Shown one piece after another: positions 39,788 to 39,865 of a stretch of DNA of 64,000 bases. The notes beneath the pieces are model-generated. The model saw nothing but the letters and a program-made list of their open reading frames with translations, did no database searches and was not told the origin of the DNA. The position numbers and the translations under genes were made by a program. The stretch's first letter is position 1, and every line of letters begins with the position of its first letter. The DNA lies in NCBI RefSeq assembly GCF_902713615.1, contig NC_052176.1:10182243-10246242 (forward strand), in the 5' to 3' direction. The DNA comes from Scyliorhinus canicula. Taxonomy: Eukaryota.

Positions 39788-39865
39788 CGACCGCGGCAGG
39801 ACTCGAACTGATATCATCATCAAATTCACCGAAGTCAGACGCCTTATCCATTAGGCCACGCGGCC
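39788..39865 (-). pseudogene. tRNA-Arg(TCG) with a 16-nt intron at 37/38 and an 11-nt deletion in the variable loop/T stem
   Basis: GGCCGCGTGGCCTAATGGATAAGGCGTCTGACTTCGG[tgaatttgatgatgat]ATCAG-TTCGAGTCCTGCCGCGGTCG followed by TTTT. Confidence 0.85.

What the first reader, a model, noticed from the sequence alone, without database searches (positions are those of the whole stretch)
39788..39865. tRNA-Arg(TCG) carrying an intron at the canonical 37/38 splice position
Seen: an Arg-TCG body otherwise matching the vertebrate gene has 16 extra nt (TGAATTTGATGATGAT, plus-strand 39813-39828) exactly one base 3' of the anticodon. The third-from-last intron base is G, which can form the anticodon-intron pair with C32 that TSEN needs. 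A TTTT terminator follows. Established: human tRNA introns are essentially confined to Tyr-GTA, Ile-TAT, Leu-CAA and Arg-TCT. Inference: sharks may have an intron-containing Arg-TCG family. This copy has also lost 11 nt (AAGATTGCAGG, near repeated CAG), so it is probably dead, but the intron looks inherited from a real spliced gene rather than a random insertion.
Basis: partly seen in the sequence, partly recalled or inferred. Interest (0 to 1): 0.72.

Follow-up and report, generated by a model that had tools for sequence, protein, structure and literature searches.

The report
Dead intron-bearing arginine tRNA gene copy
This is a broken copy of a catshark arginine tRNA gene. It holds a 16-base insert exactly where tRNA introns sit, which hints at a spliced Arg-UCG tRNA family in sharks, but I could not confirm that family here.

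Summary
On the minus strand, 39865-39788 reads as tRNA-Arg(TCG) positions 1-37, then 16 extra bases (39828-39813), then only 25 of the expected 36 bases, then TTTT. The insert lies exactly between positions 37 and 38. Its third-from-last base is G, which can pair with C32 as the splicing endonuclease requires.

The copy is dead. It lacks the variable loop and the 5' strand of the T stem. ARAGORN does not call it, and Rfam scores it 25.9 bits against a threshold of 29. With the 11 bases put back, ARAGORN calls tRNA-Arg(tcg) with a 16-base intron at position 38.

The genome is the small-spotted catshark (GCA_902713615.2). The locus lies in a tRNA cluster beside histone genes.

Best reading (about 0.65): a recently inactivated member of an intron-bearing Arg-UCG gene family.

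The decisive test, finding intact paralogs with the same insert, could not be run:

Three other first-reader notes on this genome report Arg-UCG copies carrying an intron, and one states 16 bases. These are unchecked leads. [quoted passage not shown] This locus itself is ordinary.

The parts
39788..39865 (-). tRNA-Arg(TCG) pseudogene, 78 bases: 5' exon, 16-base intron-like insert and a truncated 3' exon
   Evidence: Sequence. Rfam tRNA 25.9 bits, below the gathering score of 29. ARAGORN makes no call.
39829..39865 (-). 5' exon, tRNA positions 1-37: acceptor 5' strand, D arm, anticodon-stem 5' strand and loop CT-TCG-G. The A box lies in this part.
   Evidence: unique in the window.
39813..39828 (-). 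16-base insert TGAATTTGATGATGAT, exactly between positions 37 and 38. G at -3 can pair with C32.
   Evidence: unique in the window; segment lengths 37/16/25; no local template of 10 bases or more in the window.
39788..39812 (-). 3' exon remnant, 25 of 36 bases: A38, TCAG (39-42), then directly the T loop TTCGAGT, T-stem 3' strand CCTGC, acceptor 3' strand CGCGGTC and G73. An 11-base deletion junction lies between 39808 and 39807.
39784..39787 (-). TTTT, a Pol III terminator directly after position 73
39155..39227 (-). Intact tRNA-Lys(CTT), the next intact tRNA gene downstream on the same strand (cluster context)
   Evidence: 65.2 bits.
38626..38697 (-). Intact tRNA-Met(CAT), same strand (cluster context)
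   Evidence: 58 bits.

Best explanation
This is a recently inactivated copy of an intron-bearing tRNA-Arg(UCG) gene in the small-spotted catshark. It sits in a tRNA gene cluster next to a histone gene cluster. Inferred mechanism for the parent gene: RNA polymerase III transcribes an 89-base precursor from the internal A and B boxes and stops at TTTT. The tRNA splicing endonuclease TSEN measures from the folded tRNA body and cuts on both sides of the 16-base intron, between positions 37 and 38. The C32:G(-3) anticodon-intron pair helps cleavage at the 3' site. The tRNA ligase then joins the halves. This copy later lost 11 bases: position 43, the variable loop and the 5' strand of the T stem. 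It can no longer form the L-shaped body that RNase P, RNase Z and TSEN need. It may still be transcribed, because the A box, most of the B box and the terminator remain, but it cannot give a working tRNA. Shown here: the anatomy and the deadness. Inferred: the inheritance of the insert and its splicing in the parent.
For: (1) The insert lies exactly at 37/38, and this placement cannot be shifted. (2) C32 and G at -3 fit the one rule conserved in human tRNA introns (PMC8479045). (3) With the 11 bases restored, ARAGORN calls tRNA-Arg(tcg) i(38,16). RNAfold keeps the cloverleaf and pairs anticodon bases 34-36 with intron bases 13-15. That is the same register RNAfold gives for the intron-bearing Arg-TCT-type gene at 59277-59368. 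(4) Apart from the deletion the body is unblemished: all retained stems pair and all 8 CpG sites in the 78 bases are still present in stems that still pair. If the intron is native, one lesion explains everything. If not, two large indels and no point change are needed. (5) No local template for the insert exists in the window, which argues against a templated repair patch. (6) The locus is one of three same-strand tRNA genes spaced about 500-600 bases apart, with no poly-A and no target-site duplication. That points to a DNA-level cluster member, not a retrocopy. [quoted passage not shown] (8) Unchecked leads only: notes s1-203743, s1-233987 and s1-231819 report Arg-UCG copies with an intron in this genome. 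Two are 89 letters long, which equals 73 + 16, and one states a 16-base intron.
Against: No intact paralog was seen by me and no RNA evidence exists. The spliceable look is weak evidence, since 11% of random 16-mers at this site keep the cloverleaf, form a helix and can make the 32:-3 pair. Within the classical central helix, U33 faces U13, a mismatch. A genome with thousands of tRNA-like loci could produce a few random inserts at 37/38 by chance. The neighbouring Ser-like relic shows that large internal indels do occur in this cluster. I found no paper describing an intron in Arg-TCG/UCG of any vertebrate.
Confidence: 0.65

Rival explanations
1. One-off lesion. A formerly intronless Arg-TCG gene suffered a complex repair event, or two separate indels, that added 16 bases and removed 11 bases five bases further on. 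The 37/38 position and the G at -3 are coincidence.
For: The two changes lie within 32 bases of each other, as a single faulty repair could produce. The next relic 400 bases away, a Ser-like copy at 39396-39336, also has a roughly 23-base internal deletion. Random 16-mers look spliceable 11% of the time. The insert contains a (GAT)3 run, typical of slippage-prone filler.
Against: The chance that a random insert falls at 37/38 and passes the checks is about 1/72 x 0.11, or 0.0016. Five original bases (ATCAG) stand intact between the insert and the deletion, which is unusual for a single filler event. No template exists in 64 kb. There is no point substitution elsewhere in the gene. Unchecked notes report the same 16-base length at other loci.
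Confidence: 0.27
2. Assembly or sequencing artefact. The insert and/or the deletion is not present in the animal's DNA.
For: No read-level check of the tRNA itself was possible.
Against: Both sampled 31-mers of 39768-39827 are held by contigs of runs from two samples in two studies. Twenty of the 30 possible words in that stretch span the deletion junction. The surrounding 1 kb is held by runs of eight studies. Errors in long-read assemblies are usually single-base indels, not 11- and 16-base indels.
Confidence: 0.03
3. A retrocopy of an unspliced pre-tRNA-Arg, or the head of a tRNA-derived SINE, rather than a DNA-level cluster member.
For: One unchecked note (s1-231819) reports such a retrocopy elsewhere in this genome. 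SINE-like repeats lie within a few hundred bases.
Against: There is no poly-A or A-rich tail, no target-site duplication and no tRNA-unrelated SINE body. The gene ends at position 73 followed by TTTT. It is regularly spaced with two intact same-strand tRNA genes.
Confidence: 0.04

Closest known systems
[quoted passage not shown]
   Same: The intron lies between positions 37 and 38 and is of similar length (about 12-20 bases). [quoted passage not shown] The amino acid family is the same. An Arg-TCT-type gene with a 19-base intron lies in this same window at 59277-59368 and folds in the same register.
   Different: The isoacceptor (UCG) and the tRNA body differ, and the intron sequences are unrelated. 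Arg-UCG is not among the intron-bearing families listed for human (PMC8479045, PMC10485636). This copy lacks 11 bases and cannot fold.
Ordinary vertebrate tRNA pseudogenes in tRNA/histone clusters (human chromosome 6, zebrafish chromosome 4, stingray chromosome 28)
   Same: It is a member of a tRNA cluster beside H1/H4/H3/H2A/H2B genes. The co-occurrence is described in 10.1101/2025.06.08.657570. It is decaying by internal deletion, like the Ser-like relic next to it.
   Different: It carries an intron-like insert at the canonical site in an isoacceptor where none is expected.
Intron-bearing tRNA-Pro families reported by other notes on this genome
   Same: Both have a short insert (18 versus 16 bases) at 37/38 in an isotype not known to be spliced in vertebrates (unchecked leads).
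   Different: The isotype and length differ, and I saw none of those sequences.

Membership tests
Functional nuclear class I tRNA gene (Arg-UCG) | Complete cloverleaf: acceptor, D, anticodon and T arms plus the variable loop | tested here: not met
   Only 25 of 36 bases follow the insert. Rfam gives 25.9 bits against 29. ARAGORN finds 0 genes, with or without the intron option.
Functional nuclear class I tRNA gene (Arg-UCG) | Anticodon TCG in a 7-base loop with U33 once the insert is removed | tested here: met
   The loop reads CT-TCG-G | A. ARAGORN calls Arg(tcg) on the restored forms.
Functional nuclear class I tRNA gene (Arg-UCG) | Internal Pol III promoter (A box, B box) and an oligo-T terminator | tested here: inconclusive
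   By eye, the A-box region is intact, the B box reads AGTTCGAGTCC instead of GGTTCGANNCC, and TTTT is present. No Pol III promoter model was run.
TSEN-spliced intron-containing pre-tRNA | Intron exactly between positions 37 and 38 | tested here: met
   ARAGORN gives i(38,16) on the restored sequence.
TSEN-spliced intron-containing pre-tRNA | [quoted passage not shown] | tested here: met
   C32 and G14 of the insert. The rule comes from PMC8479045. About 28% of random 16-mers also meet it.
TSEN-spliced intron-containing pre-tRNA | Intact mature domain, so that the enzyme can measure to the splice sites | tested here: not met
   The T-stem 5' strand and variable loop are deleted. The as-is fold is not a cloverleaf and is no better than shuffles (z -0.78).
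TSEN-spliced intron-containing pre-tRNA | Spliced mature RNA or free intron observed | not testable with these tools
No small-RNA run was available.
Intron-bearing Arg-UCG gene family in catshark | Other, intact copies with the same insert at 37/38 | not testable with these tools
   The genome record was found but no DNA was served. A metagenome scan gave only chance hits. Only unchecked notes exist.
Retrocopy of a pre-tRNA or tRNA-derived SINE | A-rich or LINE-type tail and target-site duplication | tested here: not met
   The flanks show neither.

The most novel reading that the evidence does not exclude
The catshark, and perhaps sharks generally, keeps a working tRNA-Arg(UCG) gene family with a 16-base intron that TSEN removes. 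This would be a lineage-specific gain of a tRNA intron in a vertebrate isoacceptor that is intronless in human. This pseudogene would be a recent casualty of that family.
Probability: 0.55. Interest if true: 0.55.

Novelty: new member of a known kind. Interest (0 to 1): 0.3.

Why it matters
How eukaryotic tRNA genes gain introns is unknown, and the set of intron-bearing tRNA families in vertebrates is treated as small and fixed. A shark-specific Arg-UCG intron family, alongside the proline families noted elsewhere in this genome, would give a recent and datable case of intron gain. It would also supply new natural substrates for TSEN. This locus alone cannot establish that. It is a dead copy, and its main value is as a pointer to the intact copies.

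Tried and rejected
1. Read laying on 39740-39915 with four DNA runs was meant to catch paralog contigs with or without the 16 bases. I worked beside them on 39788-39827 and the flanks. Only closed local computations (RNAfold and ARAGORN inside run_python) read them from the window file.
2. I tried to walk to the copy noted 51 kb upstream by looking up the H1 protein. This identified the genome as GCA_902713615.2, but no DNA was served.
3. A scan of metagenome contigs with the allowed 20-mer gave 10 hits. All were chance matches, mostly in what look like coding sequences, and none lay in a tRNA.
4. A findings search by sequence with the allowed 40 bases was blank, which means nothing.
5. A paper search for the 3' half string found 0 papers. 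Searches for Arg-TCG/UCG with tRNA intron found nothing relevant. One 'shark' hit was the author name Sharkady.
6. A search for a local template of the insert found none of 10 bases or more.
7. Segmental duplication of the cluster was rejected. The repeats around it are dispersed SINE-like elements.
8. The second sequencing-run run had only 2 sampled words, so it is weak.

Full report
**What is there.**
On the minus strand, 39865-39788 reads as follows:
- GGCCGCG (acceptor strand), TG
- GCCT / AATGGATA / AGGC (D arm), G
- TCTGA (anticodon-stem 5' strand)
- CT-TCG-G (loop positions 32-37)
- TGAATTTGATGATGAT (the insert)
- ATCAG
- TTCGAGT (T loop)
- CCTGC (T-stem 3' strand)
- CGCGGTC (acceptor 3' strand), G
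- TTTT

Its placement cannot be shifted, so it lies between tRNA positions 37 and 38. The 5' part has the canonical 37 bases. After the insert only 25 bases remain, where a class I tRNA needs 36. Eleven bases are therefore missing between 39808 and 39807: position 43, the variable loop and the 5' strand of the T stem. The acceptor stem (7 pairs, one of them G-U), the D stem (4 pairs) and the four remaining anticodon-stem pairs are all intact.

**Is it a working gene?**
No.
- ARAGORN finds seven tRNA genes in the window but not this one. It still finds nothing with its intron option at the default threshold.
- Rfam's tRNA model gives 25.9 bits, under the gathering score of 29.
- The sequence as it stands does not fold as a cloverleaf and folds no better than shuffles (z -0.78).

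Five of them are fixed by complementarity to CCTGC. ARAGORN then calls tRNA-Arg(tcg) with a 16-base intron starting at position 38. Without the insert it calls a plain 73-base tRNA-Arg(tcg).

**Does the insert look like an intron?**
Formally, yes.
- Eukaryotic tRNA introns always lie at 37/38 (PMC10485636).
[quoted passage not shown] Here these are C32 and G.
- RNAfold on the restored 89-mer keeps the cloverleaf. It pairs anticodon bases 34-36 with insert bases 13-15. That is the same register it gives for the Arg-TCT-type intron gene at 59277-59368 in this window.

This look is cheap, though. Of 3000 random 16-mers placed at the same site, 11% keep the cloverleaf, form such a helix and allow the 32:-3 pair. 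The improbable feature is the position, about 1 in 72, for a joint chance of roughly 0.0016 per random insert. A genome with many thousands of tRNA-like loci could produce a few such cases.

**Internal arguments for an inherited intron.**
- Apart from the deletion the gene is unblemished. Every retained stem pairs, the conserved bases are present, and all eight CpG sites survive. If the intron is native, one deletion explains the copy. If not, two large indels occurred without any point change.
- Five original bases (ATCAG) stand between the insert and the deletion, which does not fit a single filler-type repair.
- No template of 10 bases or more for the insert exists anywhere in the 64 kb.
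- The locus is not a retrocopy. It has no A-rich tail and no target-site duplication. It sits about 560 bases upstream of an intact Lys-CTT gene and about 1.1 kb upstream of an intact Met-CAT gene on the same strand.

**Context.**
The H1 protein encoded at 16738-17403 is on record in exactly one place, a 12.1-Mb record of GCA_902713615.2. Papers name this accession as the small-spotted catshark assembly sScyCan1. The window holds an H1-H4-H3-H2A-H2B group with three histone 3' stem-loops and eight tRNA-type loci. The Squalomix preprint (10.1101/2025.06.08.657570) describes this tRNA/histone co-occurrence in elasmobranchs. [quoted passage not shown] I found no paper that mentions an intron in Arg-TCG/UCG of any vertebrate.

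**The decisive test could not be run.**
The question is whether intact Arg-TCG genes with the same insert exist.
Only closed local scripts (RNAfold, ARAGORN) read them from the window file.
- A metagenome scan with the allowed 20-mer gave only chance hits.
- The second run search had just two sampled words. Runs of two samples from two studies hold both. This weakly argues against an assembly artefact.

**Leads from the scan's own notes (unchecked, not counted as support).**
- s1-203743: 'Intron-containing tRNA-Arg(TCG)', 89 letters, 51,187 bases before this window.
- s1-233987: 'tRNA-Arg(UCG) with an apparent canonical 16-nt intron', 89 letters, on another piece.
- s1-231819: a retrocopy of an unspliced pre-tRNA-Arg(UCG).

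Eighty-nine is exactly 73 + 16. If these notes hold, the family is real and this locus is its dead member. Several followed-up notes also describe intron-bearing proline tRNA families in this genome. The scan has therefore flagged this kind of thing before, on other DNA of the same genome.

**Verdict.**
- Best reading (0.65): a young pseudogene of an intron-bearing Arg-UCG family, killed by an 11-base deletion. Splicing of the parent genes by TSEN is inferred, not shown.
- Main rival (0.27): a one-off complex lesion that happens to sit at 37/38.
- Assembly artefact and retrocopy are unlikely.

The locus itself is ordinary. The family-level idea is moderately interesting and cheap to test with a genome-wide tRNAscan-SE run.

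Noticed in passing
window 39336-39396, minus strand: A second tRNA relic lies between the Arg pseudogene and Lys-CTT. It is a tRNA-Ser-like copy that aligns to the intact Ser genes of the window but lacks about 23 bases (the anticodon arm). It also has changes in the D stem and acceptor. Neither ARAGORN nor Rfam calls it. Internal deletions therefore recur in this cluster.
   Followed up: partly
window 59277-59368, plus strand: This is an Arg-TCT-type tRNA gene with a 19-base intron (Rfam 53.5 bits, fold z -3.2). On the canonical 37/38 reading it has C instead of A at position 37, and its T loop reads TTTTAAT instead of TTCGAxT. ARAGORN parses it instead as Arg(tcg) with an intron at position 36. 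It may be a decaying copy or a divergent variant.
   Followed up: partly
window 44676-44748, 61242-61322 and 62676-62757, plus strand: Lys-CTT, Ser-AGA and Ser-CGA copies each show one or two non-standard pairs in the T stem or anticodon stem in the Rfam alignments. This suggests birth-and-death turnover of tRNA genes in this cluster.
   Followed up: no
window 16738-23324: A complete histone gene group lies here: H1 (16738-17403, +), H4 (18223-18534, +), H3 (within ORF 19431-19895, +), H2A (within ORF 20817-21254, -) and H2B (22911-23297, -). Three histone 3' stem-loops lie at 19920, 20747 and 22833. The group is next to the tRNA cluster, as on human chromosome 6.
   Followed up: partly
window about 37535-38035: A run of 500 N (a gap or masked stretch) lies about 600 bases from the Met-CAT tRNA gene.
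   Followed up: no
window 1342-3942, 29590-31582 and 36376-36924: These are long simple satellite arrays that read as repetitive pseudo-ORFs (for example WVCVRE units). They skew the window's base composition to G 28% and C 19%.
   Followed up: no
window 50931-52613 and 55116-57371, plus strand: Two long retroelement ORFs lie between the tRNA genes. One is a 560-residue reverse-transcriptase ORF of LINE type. The other is a 751-residue ORF that looks like a Penelope-type reverse transcriptase with a C-terminal nuclease-like part.
   Followed up: no
window 39869-39885, minus strand, directly upstream of the tRNA: A tandem duplication GCTTACAG-GCTTACAG abuts the 5' end of the pseudogene. A dispersed shark repeat starts about 70 bases upstream (39934 onward, with copies near 42816 and 44558).
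   Followed up: no
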